Positions 21,893 through 60,300 of a stretch of 64,000 nucleotides of DNA are shown in pieces. Below the pieces are notes generated by a model, which ran no database searches, was not told where the DNA came from, and saw nothing but the letters and a program-made list of their open reading frames with translations. The position numbers and the translations under genes were made by a program. Numbering within the stretch: the stretch's first letter is position 1; each line of letters opens with the position of its first letter. The stretch lies in assembly GCA_000320545.1 (NCBI GenBank), contig ADNK01001956.1, positions 1 through 64,000 of the forward strand, read 5' to 3'. This stretch comes from Bigelowiella natans CCMP2755. Its lineage: Eukaryota > Protista > Cercozoa.

Positions 21893-22209
21893 TGTGTATC
21901 GGCGAATAAATCAGTTCTTTGAAGACAATTTGATGCATAAATTGACATATAAATATATGTGTCCATGCATGTCTCAATGTGGGACATCAGATAGGAGCCT
22001 TGGCAATGAGAAGACAGAGGCATGTGACTCTGGATGATGATGCTGCTTCTTCCGTGAACAGCATCTACTTCACGTTAAACAACAACAGCAACAACTACAA
22101 CACCGATGATGCAACTACTACTTCCAAAAACGTAACCAGAACTAGTGACAAAACAACTAGTTGGCTCCATCGACTCTTCAAATCAAATTTGAAACAAAAA
22201 ACAAGGTAG
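9303..22209 (+). CDS. ABCG: ABCG (White-like) half transporter, many small exons; start approximate
   Basis: Exon-split Walker A LLGIMGPSGC/GKTTMLNCL (10320/10862), VRETLEIAAQLQLP (11515), signature SGGERRRLSLARELL (12546), Walker B ILIADEPTS/GLDTFQA, H-loop TLHQ/PRSS, NPSEYLLDLVS, then ABC2 membrane domain (FSRERETVQRERARGQY, SKVITELPID, SPIKWSIESLL). Last exon ends in TAG at 22209. Confidence 0.9.
18842..19019 (+). repeat. Long imperfect (CTA/CGA)n intronic microsatellite, representative of dozens of di- and trinucleotide tracts in introns
   Basis: Directly visible. Similar (CAT)n, (TAG)n, (TAA)n, (CAA)n, (GGA)n, (CA)n, (GA)n and (TA)n tracts occur throughout 9-49 kb. Confidence 0.95.
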
Positions 22210-22960
22210 CTAAAGCTAGTTGAAACCATTAGCGCATCAAATTGTGCCCATGCACACACCTCACAATGGCACAAAGAGACACGGCCACATTTCCTGTTCC
22301 GCATCCATCTTCAGTTCTCTCACATCAACACTGAGTGAAAAAAGCTGGTCACACGCACGGCGAGGATGCTGCTTACTTAGCTGCTGCGTTAATGTTGTCG
22401 CATTGCAACAATCTTTGCATCATTCCACCTTGTGTTGTGGTTCTTAGCTCGCATCGTCATGCGGATTGTGCGTCGCATGCATGAATTGCATTGCATGCTA
22501 GCATGGTGGTGGTAGTTCCATGTTCCATGCCTAGCTGTTTTTGCATTTGTTTCCGCTACATGCGGGCGCTGGAATCGACCGATCGATGTGATGCGAGCGC
22601 AACAAGCAGCAAGTCGATCATCTATGATGCAAGCTGAGCAGAATGTGCACGCACAATGAGTCACGCAGTGCCAGCGTGCATGTAACTGTTTTCACACACC
22701 GCATCGATCATCGACGATTCCGATTCCATGCTAGCATGCAAGTCGTTGTCACACGTAGCAATGAAAACGGCCACGATGAAGCCGCAGTGTGCTGGATGCA
22801 TGCTGGCATGGAACAACAGCGTGTTAAGGGATTTCATGTGGCGGTGTTGTCTACGTGGCGGCACATCTATAGACAAGCGCAAAGCTTTAGGCAATGCGTC
22901 ATGTGTGGTCGTTGGCGGCATGGCGGAACGAAATGACGTACAGAGGAGTCTGCGATCCAC
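22210..22960. other. Partially TpA-depleted intergenic island between convergent 3' ends
   Basis: About 21 TA in 22201-22920, of which 17 are in CTA or TAG context; strong TGCA/CATG excess. Confidence 0.7.
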
Positions 22961-23238
22961 TTGCCTGTTATTTTACTAATTGGTGAGCGAAGTGTTGCTA
23001 GACTGAGGAGTGACTAAAATCTGTCATTTGTGATCATACAATCGTCGTCATTTGCATCTAGGTTGCCAGCAATGATTGATTTTGTTGCGTATAGCTGGCC
23101 ATTGAAAATTCTGCCCTTTAGCGGGTGTGCACGAGGTGAGGCGCACGCTATGCACCAACACACACTTGACTACGTACAACTTCTTCTTCGATCCATTCTA
23201 CACGCATTGTCCTACTACCGCTCACATAACATCTCATA

Positions 23239-32959: not shown

Positions 32960-33466
32960 CAAGAGGCATCATCAACAAGGCAGATGCTAGTAATCATCAT
33001 ACATGATGGGTTCTGAATGACAACGCGCTCACATCGTGATTGCATAGCAACTATGACACATTTATCAAAACAACTCCTCACCACAAATCACCAACTGTGT
33101 GCGTACCACAGAGGCTTAGAATTGGATATTTTTCCAATCGCTAGATCGCTCACACCATCTAGACTCTGTGGGGGCAATTGCTTGTGAGGCCAACGTGCAT
33201 GCTAGCATGGCTAGATGGCGCGAGGGGGGACACCTTTACAAGTCGATCGCACCTGCAGCCTGCACCATGCTAGCATGTGCGCTCTAGCGCTCATTGCACA
33301 CTGGCATGAAAGCACGTGCACCTTCTAGCCACATGCTACTAGCATGCTGGCATGGACGCAGCCTCTAGCTAGCCAGAGGCTAGTTTCAGCCAGCCCATGC
33401 CACACACATCTAGACATGCCAGCATGCACACACCTGCACAAGTGCGATGCACACACACTGGACACA

Positions 33467-33500
<34 letters not shown>

Positions 33501-34316
33501 TTGCACATCTCTAGATCTCCAAACAGATCTAGAGATCTCCAGATCTGGACGTGCTGCGCTCTCCAGCTAGCTAGCTGTCCAGGTTGTGTGCTGGTCTGGC
33601 AGTCCAGCAATGCAAGACGAATGTGATGAATCAAATCAAGTTTGTTCAATGGTCATGCTCATGCAGCTGTGCATGTGGTCAGTCTGCGACCACCAAATGC
33701 ATGCAAGTGCGCATGCGCATGCATGAGTGCAAATGGGAGTGCACGTTGTGCTTTGTCATGTCTCACATTTTCATGCAGGCATGCTCATGCAGGTTCAGGC
33801 TGCATCCACTGTGGCTCAGCTAGTCACACAGGGGCATGCAACGTGACACGTTGCATGCCCAGAAACATTGTTGCAGGAGGGGGCACGTGCAGCGGGAAAA
33901 CATCCATCTCGGTTGTCAAACCGTGGATGTTTTCCAGGAGCACCCTCGGTGTCTCACTTGCGACAAGGAGTCGGCCCACGCAGTGTGACATTTCAGGGAA
34001 AAATGGCGGGGATTTTTCCCGAATTTTTGGGCCACTGTGGCTGCGCAGCATGCTGCTGATGGGGATGCTGTGTGCCCAGCGCATGACGTGCATTGGCGCT
34101 CAATGATTGGCCAGTTTGGCATGCTCTGAACGACCCGCAAGCAAGCGGCAAGCTTTCTTCTTTGGCAGTTTGCTCATGCATGGTCACCTCACGTCACACG
34201 TTCATCAGGGTGTTGGTTTTGTGGACTCAAGCATTGTCAAAGCACACATCAGCACGGTTGTGTTGTCAGCGCTGCGCAATGCAACTGCACTGGTGGCGGA
34301 CGAACTGCGTCAAGTG

Positions 34317-36650
34317 ATGGATCAAGGGAACTCGATTGGGTCTCAGGATGTGACCAGGGACCATGTGGAGGGAGCTGAGGGCAAGGAGACCAAGTCAGAA
34401 AAATCGGAAGTTTGGACGGGAGGCAATGGGCTTCGGGAAGGTGTCCCGGTGGCTCAGCCCGTGGCTTCTGAGCGTTCACATGAGCTTGGAACGGGCGCCC
34501 GGCACTCCCTGACCGTGCAGGACGTTTTGGAGCAGTTTGGGAACTTGGGTGTTCACGACAGCCGACGGGTTGCAAAGTGTGTCTTGCACTGCGACGGCAT
34601 CGATGAAAGTGTGGATGACTTGGTCAAAGTGATGACCAATGACTCATTGGAATCGCGGGAGTTTGCACTTTGTCGTTGCATGGACAAGGGGGCAACTTTG
34701 CGAACTTGGGCCTGCACGTTCAAGAAAAGCAGGGACCCGGATCGTGCTCCACCAGGCACGCTGGAGACGAAGGAGCGGAAGGCCAAGCAGCAGCCTTCTG
34801 TTCGGGACATCACGGGCGCCATCGACTCACTTCGACGGCACTGCCCGATCAAAGGGAAGCTGTGTGTGGCTGCTGTGAGTCCACCACAGTTTCGCAGGAA
34901 AGCTCGTGGGCTTTGTGATGAAATCAAAGCACGCGCTGCTTTGGTCGGTCAAACCGACTTGGGGTTCGGTTGCAAACGTTTCCAGACGTGTTCATCCTCT
35001 CGTGCGCTTGAGAGGCTTCGTCGGGAAGCAGTGAGGAACCGGTGTGACTCAGAGACTCCAGAGGACCAGTTTGAGATGGCCCTGGAGCATCCATGCGATG
35101 AGGAGGACAAAGATGAGCTTCAACGGGACTTCGAGGATGAGCTCGATTTTCTTCGTCGAAAGCGGCATCGCCACGTTGATGCGACACACCGGCAGTTCAG
35201 CGAGCTCACACTGGAGTTGCTGGGCCACGTTTTGGTCGTGCTGACAAGTTGCGGTGCTTTCAGCGCTTGTTGGCAGGCCATCAACCACGCGACAGGTTCA
35301 TCGCGCCACTCAATGGGTTCAGGCCGCACGACGTCGATGAGCTTGTCAAGCATTTGAGGCCGCTGGAGGAGAGCCATTGTGATTTCAAAGCTCACCCTCT
35401 TCATTCTGATGCTTCTGCAGTTGCAGGACCTGCGGTGCAGCGTGAATGCGTGCACTTCAAACGTGGGAAGTGTGATCACGGTGATGAGTGCAAACTTTTG
35501 CACACCAAGCAGCAGACCACAAGTGAGCAGAAATCCAGGAAGTGCACACTGGAGCAGCTTGATGGGATGAAGAGTCAAGACTGTCTGCTTCACTTGAAAG
35601 GCAAGTGCCATCGTGGGGACAAGTGCAAGTTCCGCCACGGTGCTGGGAGTCTTGAAGCTGCTGGAGGGGTGCCTGTGGGCTTTTCCTCTCACACCTGTGA
35701 GGAGTCTGCCGATGCTCCCAAGCAAAACACGGAAGCATCGCTCCTCCAGGTCAACTCCCAGTCACTTCCTGAGTTGATCAGAGAAAGTGAGCAGCGTCAT
35801 CGTGAGCGAGACCCAAGTTTGAGGTCTCGGAAAAAAGTCAAGTGCTTCCTGCAGGCGGACGATGGCGCCGTTGCAGCACTTGGTCCAATCGACTGGTGTT
35901 GAACACCAGTGCAAATGGGTTCGTTCTGAAGCTTGCTGAAACTTCACTTTTGAACAAGCTCGTTTGCACTGGTGTTGAACACCAGTGATCGATGATGGGG
36001 CCCAACCTGCCACCACTTCAGAGGCTCCGTGCCAAAAGTCAAAATCGGCTGGTGTCAAGTTTGGCCACCGTCCGATGGTTGGGGAGGCAGGAGGCTCAAG
36101 TTCATCGATCAAAAGTGAAACTTTGCGAGAAGTCGATTTTGCGGTCCAGATGAAAAAACACGAAAAGCATGGAGCGCACGTTGAGCTCCGCACTTGTGCT
36201 CTGGTGCTGTCTGGACCGGTCTCGCAGGACTTTGTGTTGGGCATTGGAACCCTTGACGTGAATGGCATTGACTCTGTTGAGGATCCTGACCCAGTGAAGC
36301 GAGTTGTGACGATTGGTGGTGAAATCGTTGGTTCACATCCGTGCAGCGTTGACGTGATGTCAGCGACTGTTGCAACCGTCACGGGGATGGACATGCCTCC
36401 AATGGCGGCGGCTCCCGGCGAGGTTTGTGGCATGGATGCAAGCCTTGCGGGAGAATTGCCGGGAGTGGAGGAGGCATCTGCATCGATCGTCAGTTGTGCG
36501 CAAAGAGCTGGCGGACACCGTGGATTGTGGTTTCGCAAGTGACCATGACCACGTGATCAAAGCACAAGCTGGCAAGGTTTGCCGGACATCGATGTCAAAT
36601 CGATGGCAAATCCCATCGAATCTGGTGGAGTGCTTCTCCAGCGATCATCC
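34317..36650 (+). mobile_element. Degenerate LTR-type (Ty3/Gypsy-like order) retrotransposon fragment: gag with two CCCH fingers, aspartic protease, start of pre-RT linker
   Basis: CVHFKRGKCDHGDECKLLH and CLLHLKGKCHRGDKCKFRH (C-x7-C-x5-C-x3-H); protease (L)IDDGA...DFVLG once the 35893-35992 insertion is removed; frameshifts; no RT, RNase H or integrase visible. Confidence 0.7.
35893..35985. mobile_element. 93-bp fold-back/MITE-like insertion with 7-bp target-site duplication
   Basis: Both ends carry the near-palindrome CTGGTGTT-G-AACACCAG; imperfect inner IR TGCAAATGGGTTCGTTC / GAACAAGCTCGTTTGCA; flanked by CAATCGA (35886-35892) and TGATCGA (35986-35992); splits the protease Asp codon. Confidence 0.8.
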
Positions 36651-38180
36651 AGCATTGTGCCGCTGTCAGAGTTTGGCGACCAACGTGCAGTCGCCAACTC
36701 TGACTTGGTGAGCGGCCACGTGCTGGACGTGCTCGATCGCTTGGAGCGTGATCGAGGTGGTTGCAAAGGAGGAGAGCAGCACCATCCTCAAGGACGCCAT
36801 CGACACACACAGCCATCGGGGCAGAGTCAGTTTTCTCCCGAAGTGGAGTCTGGCACCAGGAGCTGGCTGCGTCTCCATCGAGGCTCTCGAGTCTGCGGTG
36901 GCAAGCGTTGGTGCTGTGCTTCTTGGCGTTGCGTGGTGATCTGTTGAGGTCACGTCTGAGGCGACTGGCCATGGGCACAAGTCGACGGTCTCCTTGTGAG
37001 ATGAGGTGCTCGCATTCACGAAGTTGTGATCCAAGGGAGTCGACACAAGGACCATGATGGACGAAGGGTTTCCTGTTGGGGCGTTTTTTGCCAACTGCAC
37101 GCCTGGCTTTTGCCAGGATGGTGTTGGTCACATCGACGGGAAGGCATTCGTGCCATTCGTGGTTTGCAAGAGCTTGACCAAGGGCTTGCATGCGGTCCCC
37201 ACGTTTGTTCCACGAACGTTCAGGCAGTGGTTGGGGCGGCTTCGTGCCCCATCGTGGGAACGCTGCTGCTTGTTGTTTGTGATCGCTGCCGAGGCCAGCG
37301 AGGGTGTCGCAGGACAGGAAAGTGGATGCCCCGCGTGCAATGGCTTCAGAGGTGCAGAATGTGTGGTCTGGGGATGAGAGTTGAACTTGGAGGACGTCAT
37401 TGGTGCCAATGTGCTCCACTCTCGTGTGTTTCCCCATCGCGACGTTCCACTCAAGGTCGACATGGTGTTCACCCAAATCGTTCATGGTTTGGGGAAGGTT
37501 TTCGCCTTCGCGGTTGGATTTCGAGTCCCCACGTGCTCCGATGATTCTGCCATTGAAGTCGCCTCCGGACAGGAAGCTGTCACGTTTTCGTTCGCCCATC
37601 AGGAGTGCACTGAGAGCCTCCCTGCGGCGGGCATCTCCAGCACAAGGCCAGCAGGCTGTGTGAAATGCCAGTTCATTGTTGCCAATTTCAAACCATGCGT
37701 TGAATTCATCATGGGAGAGGATTGATGGCGGGATCTTGCTCAAGATCCCCATTCCTCTGGGCCGCGTTTCATCCAATGCATGGCACTTGTGGTCGCCGCC
37801 TGAGACGTCTTCGTTTTGCAACTTGGCATCAAATGGACACGCGACGTCAATTTTTTCTCTGGCAAGGGACTTGATTAGCAGGCTCCTCTCATTCCGCAGG
37901 CCACGCAAATCAAAGAAGGCTGCTTTCAATGGAATGTCCCTTGCAGCGGCGGGAAGGTGTGGGTGGACGAACGGTCACGCCAGCACGCGCTGCCCAGCTG
38001 TGGACGTTTGCGAAAATGGCAACTGGGCTGAAACCACGATTGCATGAAACTTCATGAGACTTCGAACAAGAGGCGTTCCTCTTCATTAGCTCACTCAATG
38101 AATCTCATCGCAAACTCAACCCAGAGGCCAGAGTGGGGGCGCGCGGCGGCGACGTTCACGTGCGACCTTCCCGGGAGACA
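36650..38180 (-). mobile_element. Non-LTR (LINE) retrotransposon 5' fragment with APE/EEP endonuclease, lacking RT
   Basis: ORF 37929-36595 has GGDFNG, NREGE, SSPDHTF (ancestral SSLDYIF), GSDH and FFDLRGL (ancestral FFNLRGL); no Tyr in 444 aa. Confidence 0.85.
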
Positions 38181-38517
38181 TTGATTTCATTTGTTGATTC
38201 GGCCTCCTACATGTACTCTCGAGATATTAATTTTATTTATTAATTCGGCCTCACTTGCTACCCCTCTCTCTCCCCATCGGGTACATTATTCACATAGATC
38301 TAGATCTTCTACTACTATAGATCTGGGAGGAGAGGACAGACAATCTTTATTGCAGGTAAGTCAGGAAGGAAGCTAGGTTGTGGTGGCGGAAACGTTCATT
38401 GTAATCTGATGTGGATGACACAATTACTAACCGAAAGCTACAGCATCTGATCGATTTCATTCTCCAGGCAACTTGACGGGTCACTGGAGCACACAATAAT
38501 CTGAATAATTTAGCATC

Positions 38518-58679: not shown

Positions 58680-60300
58680 AAAACCTCAGGAGGACCAGTG
58701 TCTCCATTGAATGCGTTTGCCTAGTTTTGAAATGTGATCAATGACCTCGCAATTTTGCATCATGTAAGTTCTCATGCTTGCAGGACAATCCATGCGCGCG
58801 TGCAGTGTCCTCAAAGCTAGCAGACTGCGGTGGCTTGTTGTGCTGTCATTGCAGGGAACTCGCGCTCGAAGTGAGTGCACACGTGTGCGATGCTGTCGAT
58901 CAGCTGTGTGACCATCTTGTGCGACGGTGATGCACAGATGCAAGATGGATGCAATGAAGTGATGTACGAACTGTTGGCCAGTGCCAATGAGATCAGCGTG
59001 CAGATGATGACAATTTTTGGGAAAAAAACCAAAAAAGGTCAGGAATGATTGTTCCAGAAGCCACGCTGTGCATTGTGTGATTGGAGTTGTGTTTCTTGCA
59101 TGTTGGCACAATCAATGTGAACTTGTTGCATCGCAGGTCCGCAACACTCGCCACGTCATCGCGACATTGAGATGACAAACCAAAAAAGTCGAGGTGGCCG
59201 GGCTAGCCCCCTGACTCGACTTTCTGCATCAAGCTCGTGTGCACTCGTTGTTCGAACTGGCGACGTTTCGAGTGCCATTGACAGGGCTCCCTGTGCGATG
59301 CAGACTTGGACGCGTGCTTTTGCAGCCAAGCGCACGTGTGGATTAATCAACAATTCATCGCGACGACGTTCACCTCGTCTTTCACTTTTTCCAATGATGG
59401 CATTGCTGTGTCCATTGTTCCAGACCTACTGCTGTGCTTGCTGATCTTGGGAAGTGGTCTGTTGTTTTTGCTCCTTTGTTTCGCTGGCATGAAACAGAGG
59501 TCTGAGGTGGAAGGACCAAAAGGGGAACGATCAATTGGTTCATTGAAGCACAGAGAAGCATTGGGCTGAATCGTTTTCATTTTGACGATCATGTCGCATC
59601 GATCGCGCGACGCTCAGAACAATGAACAATGAACAATGAACAATGAACAACAATGATGAACCACACTTCCAAAGTGTGACAAGACATTTGCAGTGTGCGA
59701 AATGCAGTGCCTCGAACTGACTTCAGTGAGGTCCACCTAGTGAAACCAGAAGGAATCAAGAATGGCATTCTGGCCACTCCTCCGTTCCTAGTTTCATTGT
59801 CTTTGGTGCCTGACACTTGCCAACTTCAGGACCACGCACCCCTGAATCCTGCCGTGATGGTTTGCTCATGCTTGGAGATCACCAAGCAAGAACACCACAC
59901 CTGCGAACCCCAAGCGAACAATCAATCCCATGGACCACATCTTCATGGTCTGCTTCATGCCTGCCACAACATCCCCGGCTTTTGCGGAGACATTGCCCTC
60001 ACTGGAAGGCATGAAGATGGAGGAGGATGCATTCTTCGTTGCTAGTCCACTTGGACAACGAGCTTCGCAATGACCACAACATCCCCGGCTTTTGCGGAGA
60101 CAAAGCCCCCATCATTGCAATTGGAAGCACTAGCTTCACGCCAACCACAACATCCCCGGCTCAGAAAGAACAATGAACAACAATGAACAATGATGATGAA
60201 CAGAACGACAACGTTTCCGGAGTGTGAATGAGAAAAGAATGAGAAGTTGTAGCAGTGGTGTTCGAACATCGAGAATTTCTCTTCAGATGAGAGATTCCTG
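58680..60300. other. TpA-depleted island, probable degraded repeat or TE relics
   Basis: About 12 TA in 1620 bp, 7 of them CTAG; internal direct repeats and a hairpin; no recognisable protein domain. Confidence 0.8.

What the first reader, a model, noticed from the sequence alone, without database searches (positions are those of the whole stretch)
37357..37929. Reverting TG/CA to TA rebuilds the conserved LINE endonuclease motifs, fixing the direction of mutation
Seen on the minus strand: TCC CCA GAC CAC ACA TTC (SPDHTF, 37374-37357) becomes CTA GAC TAC ATA = SLDYIF with three single TA restorations. TTT GAT TTG CGT GGC (FDLRG) becomes TTT AAT = FNLRG. GCC TGC TGG CCT (ACWP) becomes AYWP. 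Established: xNxRGL, YxP, GDFN, SxL/IDYxF and SDH are the conserved APE-type endonuclease motifs, and the TA-free motifs GDFN and SDH are untouched here. Inference: the element once had these TA sites and was inactivated by their loss.
Basis: partly seen in the sequence, partly recalled or inferred. Interest (0 to 1): 0.85.

Follow-up and report, generated by a model that had tools for sequence, protein, structure and literature searches.

The report
TA-erased LINE endonuclease fragment, known hypermutation

Summary
Window 33821-37876 has no TA in 4,054 bases, where about 200 are expected. TG and CA are in excess.

**What is there.** It abuts a truncated, equally TA-free Ty3/Gypsy fragment on the plus strand.

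**Direction TA to TG/CA is confirmed:**
- An intact TA-rich Gypsy copy elsewhere in the genome has 204 aligned TA sites. In the window, 91 are CA, 72 TG, 12 CG and 1 is kept.
- The window LINE and its paralogue on contig C485 differ at 23 CA-versus-TG dinucleotides. These make up 46 of their 85 mismatches.
- Tyr-bearing LINE homologues carry Y where the window has C and the paralogue has H, and N where the window has D.

- ACWP from AYWP: correct.
- FDLRG from FNLRG: correct.
- SPDHTF from SLDYIF: wrong. S-x-P-D-H is native in the intact homologues and in all three paralogues.

**Novelty.** The mechanism is already published (Mettrop et al., bioRxiv 2026), and this scan has found it on other pieces of this genome. 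New here is detail only: each site is resolved independently, there are no strand-coordinated runs, and a TA-poor, Tyr-free LINE relative exists in an assembly that is not this genome. The organism is almost certainly B. natans, but I could not confirm the name directly.

The parts
33821..37876 (.). TA-free island: 4,054 bases between two flanking TAs, with no TA inside
   Evidence: 0 TA against 199.8 expected; TG 1.39 and CA 1.63 times expectation; GC 0.555 against about 0.40 in the flanks.
36768..37959 (-). 5' fragment of a LINE (non-LTR retrotransposon): endonuclease plus linker, truncated before the reverse transcriptase
   Evidence: 88% DNA identity to copy G000:C485, which continues into RVT_1 at E 4.9e-20. 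Homologous to LINE ORF2 proteins.
37150..37929 (-). APE-type (EEP) endonuclease domain, Tyr-free and missense-damaged
   Evidence: Alignment A2. The profile of A2 hits TRAS1 EN 1wdu (1.8e-12) and L1 EN 1vyb/2v0r. No Pfam hit on its own.
37911..37912 (-). TG derived from TA: Asn to Asp in the N-terminal xNxRGL motif
   Evidence: The window has TG and the C485 copy has CA at this dinucleotide. N is present in all sequences covering the column.
37652..37653 (-). TG derived from TA: Tyr to Cys in AYWP (active-site Tyr position of APE-type nucleases)
   Evidence: Window TGC, C485 CAC. Y in 5 of 5 intact homologues; per-site gain +9.0.
37357..37374 (-). S-P-D-H-T-F motif, native rather than TA-derived
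   Evidence: Homologues read PPPPP and HHHNT at these columns. The three paralogues all read CCA GAC CAC.
33661..36762 (+). Truncated Ty3/Gypsy LTR-retrotransposon fragment (upstream region plus gag-pol residues 1-772 of 1597), TA-erased, with frameshifts
   Evidence: tblastn at 70-75% aa identity to the intact 1597-aa ORF of L015. DNA alignment and fate of TA sites.
33411..33573 (.). Left edge of the island: the five surviving TAs all lie in CTAG
   Evidence: positions 33411, 33512, 33530, 33568, 33572. CTAG makes up 47% of survivors in TA-poor islands against 4.3% in the background.

Best explanation
The stretch is the 5' part of a LINE retrotransposon: an APE-type endonuclease on the minus strand, lacking its reverse transcriptase. 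It lies tail-to-tail with a truncated Ty3/Gypsy element. After integration, both were hit in place, at the DNA level and on both strands, by a TpA-specific A:T-to-G:C hypermutation. An A preceded by T becomes G; on the other strand this reads as T to C. The process ran to saturation, so every TA is now TG or CA.

Consequences for the protein:
- Every Tyr codon is lost, giving His or Cys.
- TAA and TAG stops are erased, so long spurious ORFs appear in all six frames.
- At least two active-site positions of the endonuclease are changed: Asn to Asp in xNxRGL and Tyr to Cys in AYWP.

Shown here: the direction, the TA specificity, the two-strand symmetry and the independence between copies. Shown by others: ongoing mutation in culture, from the mutation-accumulation experiment in the preprint. 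Inferred only: the enzyme (an ADAT2/TadA-like adenine deaminase acting on DNA, as the preprint proposes) and a genome-defence role.
For: - **TA void.** 0 TA against 199.8 expected, with TG and CA in excess.
- **Gypsy comparison.** Against the intact TA-rich copy L015 (1597-aa ORF with RT, RNase H, integrase and CCCH fingers), 204 TA sites became CA 91, TG 72, CG 12, kept 1. TG stayed TG in 178/228 and CA stayed CA in 117/149.
- **No strand runs.** Outcomes are randomly interleaved: 83 runs against 81.4 expected.
- **LINE paralogues.** Window against C485 shows 23 CA/TG discordant dinucleotides, which is 46 of 85 mismatches; 81 of the 85 are transitions.
- **Family status.** Every same-family LINE copy found is TA-free.
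- **Homologues.** Intact homologues carry Y and N where the copies have C/H and D. The per-site control test gives p=0.0125 and p=0.007.
- **Real sequence.** Exact-match contigs appear in independent DNA runs of 2011, 2021 and 2025.
- **Published experiment.** 230 of 231 de novo mutations in the two hypermutable regions were A to G or T to C, and all of those transitions fell on TpA. TpA-poor CDS were enriched for Endonuclease-reverse transcriptase and RT Pfams.
Against: - Pfam does not recognise the window's own translation as an endonuclease. That assignment rests on homologues and on a paralogue.
- No TA-bearing copy of this LINE family was found, so its ancestral state is inferred rather than seen.
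- CA/TG discordance is not proof of an ancestral TA at each site. The catalytic SDH His codon is CAC in the window but TGC in C485, which implies a CA to TA to TG two-step route.
- The organism name could not be confirmed, because run and organism names are coded.
- The enzyme is unknown.
Confidence: 0.9

Rival explanations
1. Classical RIP-like C to T at CpA/TpG. The TA-free copies would be ancestral, and the TA-rich copies would be the mutated products.
For: TA-rich and TA-free copies of the same Gypsy family coexist. Fungal RIP does produce TpA-rich copies (general knowledge).
Against: - The TA-rich copy holds an intact 1597-aa ORF with all Pfam domains. The TA-free copy has frameshifts and no Tyr.
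- TA-free LINE copies disagree CA against TG at the same sites, which requires a TA intermediate.
- A coding sequence with no TA cannot encode Tyr.
- The published experiment saw A:T to G:C.
Confidence: 0.01
2. ADAR-like editing of the retrotransposon RNA (U-A context) before reverse transcription, so that the copies were inserted already mutated.
For: ADARs prefer a 5' U, and retrotransposons pass through RNA (general knowledge; also discussed in the preprint).
Against: - Both outcomes occur about equally on the sense strand (CA 91, TG 72) and are interleaved. Sense-RNA editing would give only TG.
- One continuous TA void covers two elements in opposite orientation and their junction.
- The preprint observed mutation in situ in single-copy integrated DNA.
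Confidence: 0.04
3. The minus-strand 'endonuclease' is a chance ORF made possible by the loss of TAA/TAG stops, and is not a LINE domain.
For: No Pfam hit. The island has 25 ORFs of at least 80 aa across all six frames. The neighbouring 36600-36771 is in fact Gypsy coding sequence on the opposite strand.
Against: - Full-library HMMER hits to LINE ORF2 proteins with EN plus RT, at E down to 1.7e-18.
- GDFN, PDH and SDH align in register.
- The paralogue has RVT_1 downstream in the same frame.
- The profile hits solved LINE endonucleases.
Confidence: 0.02

Closest known systems
TpA-directed hypermutation of integrated foreign DNA in Bigelowiella natans (Mettrop et al., bioRxiv 10.64898/2026.01.13.699255)
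   Same: Exclusive TpA to TpG/CpA change, TpA-poor and CpA+TpG-rich clusters, and enrichment of Endonuclease-RT and RT domains among TpA-poor CDS.
   Different: - The preprint follows two viral insertions that still keep TpA (3.3% and 9.2% of dinucleotides). This island is saturated, with none left.
- The word 'retrotransposon' does not occur in the preprint's main text. It does not report CA/TG discordance between copies, the absence of strand runs, or CTAG sparing.
- The combined CA+TG ratio here is about 1.49, just under the preprint's 1.52 cut-off.
Repeat-induced point mutation (RIP) of fungi
   Same: Dinucleotide-specific, saturating transition mutagenesis that wrecks transposon copies in place and on both strands.
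   Different: The chemistry and direction are opposite: RIP is C to T at CpA and makes TpA, whereas here A to G at TpA destroys it. Duplication does not seem to be the trigger. The preprint's NCLDV region is single copy, and identical TA-rich LINE and Gypsy copies persist in many copies.
APOBEC3 / ADAR hypermutation of retroelements in animals
   Same: Deaminase-type editing used against retroelements, and the 5'-U/T preference of ADAR and TadA-type adenosine deaminases.
   Different: This acts on integrated DNA, on both strands, without strand-coordinated clusters, and to saturation.
APE-type endonuclease of LINEs (TRAS1 EN 1wdu; human L1 EN 1vyb)
   Same: Same fold family by profile. GDFN, xDH and SDH motifs are in register.
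   Different: The window copy has lost the motif Asn (now D) and the active-site Tyr (now C). It falls below Pfam thresholds and lacks the RT.

Membership tests
LINE APE-type (EEP) endonuclease domain | Significant sequence homology to endonuclease domains of LINE ORF2 proteins | tested here: met
   P0008 at 1.7e-18 and P0010 at 9.6e-16; these proteins carry Exo_endo_phos_2 and/or RVT_1.
LINE APE-type (EEP) endonuclease domain | Pfam Exo_endo_phos or Exo_endo_phos_2 above the gathering score on the sequence itself | tested here: not met
   no family at E up to 0.1. A 31%-identical TA-free relative reaches only E 8e-4.
LINE APE-type (EEP) endonuclease domain | Reverse transcriptase downstream in the same ORF | tested here: not met
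   The window copy ends at 36768 against the Gypsy fragment. The feature is met in the paralogue C485: RVT_1 at E 4.9e-20.
LINE APE-type (EEP) endonuclease domain | Catalytic motif residues intact (N of xNxRG, Y of YxP, D/N of GDFN, D of xDH, D-H of SDH) | tested here: not met
   N is now D and Y is now C. GDFN, PDH and SDH are retained.
LINE APE-type (EEP) endonuclease domain | Profile similarity to solved LINE endonuclease structures | tested here: met
   1wdu at 1.8e-12; 2v0r at 1.3e-9; 1vyb at 1.3e-7. The profile includes intact homologues.
TpA hypermutation island (Mettrop et al. 2026) | [quoted passage not shown] | tested here: met
   TA ratio 0.0; TG 1.39; CA 1.63. The combined ratio of about 1.49 sits at the edge of the paper's 1.52 cut-off.
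TpA hypermutation island (Mettrop et al. 2026) | Changes are A to G or T to C at TpA specifically, on both strands | tested here: met
   203 of 204 TA sites changed, 175 of them to CA, TG or CG; 23 CA/TG discordances.
TpA hypermutation island (Mettrop et al. 2026) | Target is foreign or mobile DNA | tested here: met
   LINE and Ty3/Gypsy fragments.
TpA hypermutation island (Mettrop et al. 2026) | The genome is Bigelowiella natans | tested here: inconclusive
   Organism names are coded. Size is 91.4 Mb against about 94.5 Mb implied by the preprint (85,048,595 callable nt = 90% of genome size). Holders include 16 studies, most dated 2025. Earlier scan notes name the species.
TpA hypermutation island (Mettrop et al. 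2026) | Ongoing de novo mutation at this locus in culture | not testable with these tools
   No TA substrate is left in the island. Only Logan contigs were available for the DNA runs.
Fungal RIP | C to T at CpA, giving TpA-rich copies full of stop codons | tested here: not met
   The direction is opposite.

The most novel reading that the evidence does not exclude
The TpA-erasing process may not be confined to this genome. The closest Tyr-free relative of this endonuclease, P0007 on contig L072 from JGI sample 3300017173, is TA-poor (ratio 0.11, with TG 1.39 and CA 1.34). Its 15 surviving TAs all sit in [C/T]TA[A/G]. It has no DNA match in this genome and at most 34% protein identity to it. 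If it belongs to another species, the pathway is a lineage-wide genome defence with a readable extended sequence preference, which would narrow the search for the DNA adenine deaminase.
Probability: 0.35. Interest if true: 0.55.

Novelty: already known. Interest (0 to 1): 0.3.

Why it matters
A targeted A:T-to-G:C hypermutation restricted to TpA mirrors fungal RIP and is a rare case of apparent DNA adenine editing used against invading DNA. It is remarkable biology, but it was published in 2026 and has been met repeatedly in this scan.

This locus adds a clean natural experiment on retrotransposons, which the preprint called only a potential target:
- An intact and an erased copy of one Gypsy family show 203 of 204 TA sites converted.
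- Two LINE copies were resolved independently, site by site.

Practical lessons:
- TA-erased DNA yields long false ORFs, because TAA and TAG vanish.
- It drops below Pfam thresholds.
- Motif 'reversion' by eye can mislead unless it is checked against intact homologues.

Tried and rejected
- **Pfam on six minus-strand ORFs of the island:** nothing.
- **BLASTP of the window endonuclease against the genome's own intact LINE (L071):** no significant alignment.
- **Word-indexed protein search with the C485 ORF:** only 5 hits, of little use.
- **TA-bearing copy of this LINE family in the genome:** none found.
- **Strand-coordinated, kataegis-like runs of TG or CA:** absent. The suggestive clustering among the 23 LINE sites was not borne out by the 163 Gypsy sites.
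- **CTAG as an absolute exception:** rejected. Five CTAG sites of the intact Gypsy copy are all mutated in the window, so CTAG is slow, not immune.
not done. Such a sequence has no reference and would be a mended element. A per-site test against intact homologues was used instead.
- **Naming the organism from sequencing runs:** not possible, because the names are coded.
- **Pfam on ORFs of the other two TA-poor stretches of the window:** nothing.
- **Read laying:** given 5,201 letters.

Full report
**1. The observation**

They lie in a much larger anomaly. There is no TA at all between 33821 and 37876, which is 4,054 bases with 199.8 TA expected from base composition. TG is at 1.39 and CA at 1.63 times expectation. 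GC is 0.555 against about 0.40 around it. The rest of the window has TA at 0.86 of expectation.

Two shorter TA voids exist at 122-1002 and at 59427-60043; the second is two adjacent TA-free runs (59427-59738 and 59789-60043) with a few TAs between them.

Because TAA and TAG cannot exist here, only TGA stops remain. The island therefore shows 25 ORFs of at least 80 aa across all six frames, and open frames mean little.

**2. What the DNA is**

Pfam finds nothing in six minus-strand ORFs. A search of the window's own genome (G000, 91.4 Mb) showed that the island is two different repeats joined near 36770.

*Gypsy fragment.* Window 34317-36752 on the plus strand encodes residues 1-772 of a Ty3/Gypsy polyprotein, in three frames. 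It is 70-75% identical to an intact 1597-aa ORF in a TA-rich copy, L015, which carries CCCH fingers, RT, RNase H and the integrase zinc domain.

- It is 88% identical to a copy on contig C485. That copy continues in frame into RVT_1 at E 4.9e-20.
- An exhaustive HMMER search with the window translation found Tyr-bearing proteins of 800-1200 aa carrying Exo_endo_phos_2 and/or RVT_1: P0008 at 1.7e-18, P0010 at 9.6e-16, plus P0009, P0011 and P0014.
- A profile of the resulting alignment hits solved LINE endonucleases: TRAS1 1wdu at 1.8e-12, and L1 2v0r and 1vyb. It also hits ExoIII and APE1.

However, the window copy lacks its RT and is below Pfam detection.

**3. Direction of mutation: the Gypsy pair**

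Aligning the intact TA-rich copy with the window gives 204 aligned TA sites. In the window, 91 are CA, 72 TG, 12 CG, and one is kept. By contrast, TG stays TG in 178 of 228 sites and CA stays CA in 117 of 149.

The TA-rich copy is the one with the intact ORF, and a TA-free gene cannot encode Tyr. The direction is therefore TA to TG/CA, not the RIP-like reverse.

CA and TG outcomes are about equal and randomly interleaved: 83 runs against 81.4 expected. This indicates many independent single-site events on both DNA strands. It argues against a processive single-strand burst and against editing of the sense RNA before integration.

**4. Direction of mutation: the LINE itself**

Every same-family LINE copy found is TA-free, so no unmutated copy exists to compare with. 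The copies were resolved independently, though.

The window and C485 differ at 23 dinucleotides where one has CA and the other TG. These account for 46 of their 85 mismatches, and 81 of the 85 are transitions.
- At 37912/37911 the window has TG (Asp) and C485 has CA (Asn).
- At 37653/37652 the window has TGC (Cys) and C485 has CAC (His).

In the alignment with intact homologues, the second column is Y in 5 of 5 (AYWP or CYWP). The first is N in every sequence that covers it.

*A caveat on the discordance test.* The catalytic SDH His codon is CAC in the window and in the C2936 copy but TGC in C485. An ordinary C-to-T change can evidently create a new TA that the process then converts. A CA/TG discordance therefore proves a TA intermediate, not always an ancestral TA.

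**5.

At S-P-D-H-T-F the five intact homologues read STPDHGF, STPDHVF, SSPDHSW, TSPDNVF and SCPDTVA. The genome's own active LINE reads STLDHVL. All three paralogues read CCA GAC CAC.

In the per-site test, changing P to L scores -10, H to Y scores -4.2 and T to I scores +0.8. C to Y scores +9.0.

**6.

I did not build a reverted sequence. Instead, each single TG-to-TA or CA-to-TA change in the endonuclease was scored by BLOSUM62 against the five intact homologues. These were compared with the same base changes (G to A, C to T) in other contexts.

TA reversions fit the homologues better: Mann-Whitney p=0.0125. Gains of 2 or more occurred at 7 of 58 sites against 3 of 143, Fisher p=0.007.

The effect is real but modest. 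In the Gypsy alignment only 24% of the window's TG and 35% of its CA dinucleotides derive from TA.

**7. Reality of the sequence, and expression**

Contigs with no differences from independent DNA runs of 2011, 2021 and 2025 cover parts of the stretch. The paired TG/CA 'variants' seen at 90% likeness are the paralogues.

One RNA run, about 6% of which was read, puts almost nothing on 34600-38400. This is weak evidence for silence.

A 70-aa protein filed under Prorocentrum lima in EukProt is 100% identical to the C485 copy. It probably reflects cross-sample carry-over. It also hints that at least that copy is transcribed.

**8. What is known**

Earlier notes of this scan pointed to a preprint, which I read: Mettrop et al., bioRxiv 10.64898/2026.01.13.699255.

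Its main results, from a mutation-accumulation experiment in Bigelowiella natans:
- 231 of 302 nuclear mutations fell in two integrated viral regions.
- 230 of those 231 were A to G or T to C, and all of these transitions fell on TpA.
- 324 TpA-poor CDS were enriched for Endonuclease-reverse transcriptase, RT, DDE and a zinc finger.
- There were 124 TpA-poor clusters.
- An ADAT2-like candidate deaminase, Bn78255, was proposed.
- The conclusion names transposable elements only as potential targets.

The genome here fits that species by size and by the pattern of runs. The names are coded, so the identity is inferred rather than shown.

**9. Mechanism**

*Shown:*
- A saturating, TpA-specific, two-strand A:T-to-G:C process acting on integrated DNA.
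- It resolves each site independently.
- It erases Tyr codons and TAA/TAG stops.
- It changes the motif Asn and the active-site Tyr of this endonuclease.

*Inferred:*
- Adenine deamination by a TadA/ADAT2-like enzyme.
- A defence role.

*Not shown:* that TA loss was what inactivated this copy, since it is also truncated.

**10. Extended context**

Across the loci fetched, 47% of the TAs surviving in TA-poor islands lie in CTAG, against 4.3% in the background. CTAA/TTAG and GTAG/CTAC come next.

CTAG sites of the intact Gypsy copy are nevertheless mutated in the window. CTAG is therefore slow, not immune, as earlier scan notes on other pieces of this genome also concluded.

**11. Verdict**

- The direction-of-mutation inference is correct. 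It is supported by two of the three cited motifs and contradicted for the third.
- The phenomenon is already published and was already found by this scan on other DNA of the same genome.
- Interest is therefore modest.
- The one lead that goes beyond the literature is a TA-poor, Tyr-free LINE relative in an assembly that is not this genome.

Noticed in passing
L072:800-2851 (JGI sample 3300017173, contig Ga0186188_101424): The closest Tyr-free relative of the window endonuclease (P0007, 366 aa, no Tyr) lies on a TA-poor contig: TA ratio 0.11, TG 1.39, CA 1.34. All 15 surviving TAs sit in CTAA, TTAG, TTAA or CTAG. It has no DNA match in G000 and at most 34% protein identity to it. The process may therefore act in another organism or strain.
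   Followed up: partly
window 33411-33573; loci L001-L071: The five TAs left at the island's left edge are all in CTAG. Across the fetched loci, CTAG makes up 47% of TAs surviving in TA-poor islands against 4.3% in the background. It is not immune, because CTAG sites of the intact Gypsy copy are mutated here. This agrees with earlier scan notes.
   Followed up: yes
L027:1939-2148 (G000:C485): P0006, a 70-aa protein filed under Prorocentrum lima in EukProt, is 100% identical to the C485 TA-erased LINE copy. This is probably cross-sample carry-over in transcriptome data, and it hints that this dead copy is transcribed.
   Followed up: partly
window 122-1002 and 59427-60043 (also 22001-23000, TA ratio 0.5): Further TA-free or TA-poor stretches in the same window. 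They have no similarity to the Gypsy or LINE proteins and no Pfam hit in their ORFs.
   Followed up: partly
L071:1782-5273 (G000:C2903) and at least 10 identical copies; L015:4427-9217 (G000:C2420): The genome also holds TA-rich, apparently active elements. One is a LINE with a 1164-aa ORF from the first ATG (1179 aa open frame; Exo_endo_phos_2 plus RVT_1) in many identical copies. The other is intact Gypsy copies. On contig C236 a TA-free Gypsy copy lies a few kb from a TA-rich one. Being repeated is therefore not enough to be hypermutated.
   Followed up: partly
window 37281-37282, compared with L027 (C485): The catalytic His codon of SDH is CAC in the window and in C2936 but TGC in C485. 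This is a CA/TG discordance at a site that cannot have been TA in an active element. It implies an ordinary C-to-T change followed by TA to TG.
   Followed up: partly
window 36598-37752 (-): A public protein collection holds a 385-aa predicted protein (P0001) identical to this frame. It runs from the dead endonuclease into the antisense of the Gypsy fragment. This is an example of a false gene model created by the loss of TAA/TAG stops.
   Followed up: partly
window 36752-36768: The LINE (minus strand) and the Gypsy (plus strand) meet tail-to-tail, and both lack their 3' parts. This suggests a deletion or rearrangement between two insertions. Its timing relative to the hypermutation is unknown.
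   Followed up: no
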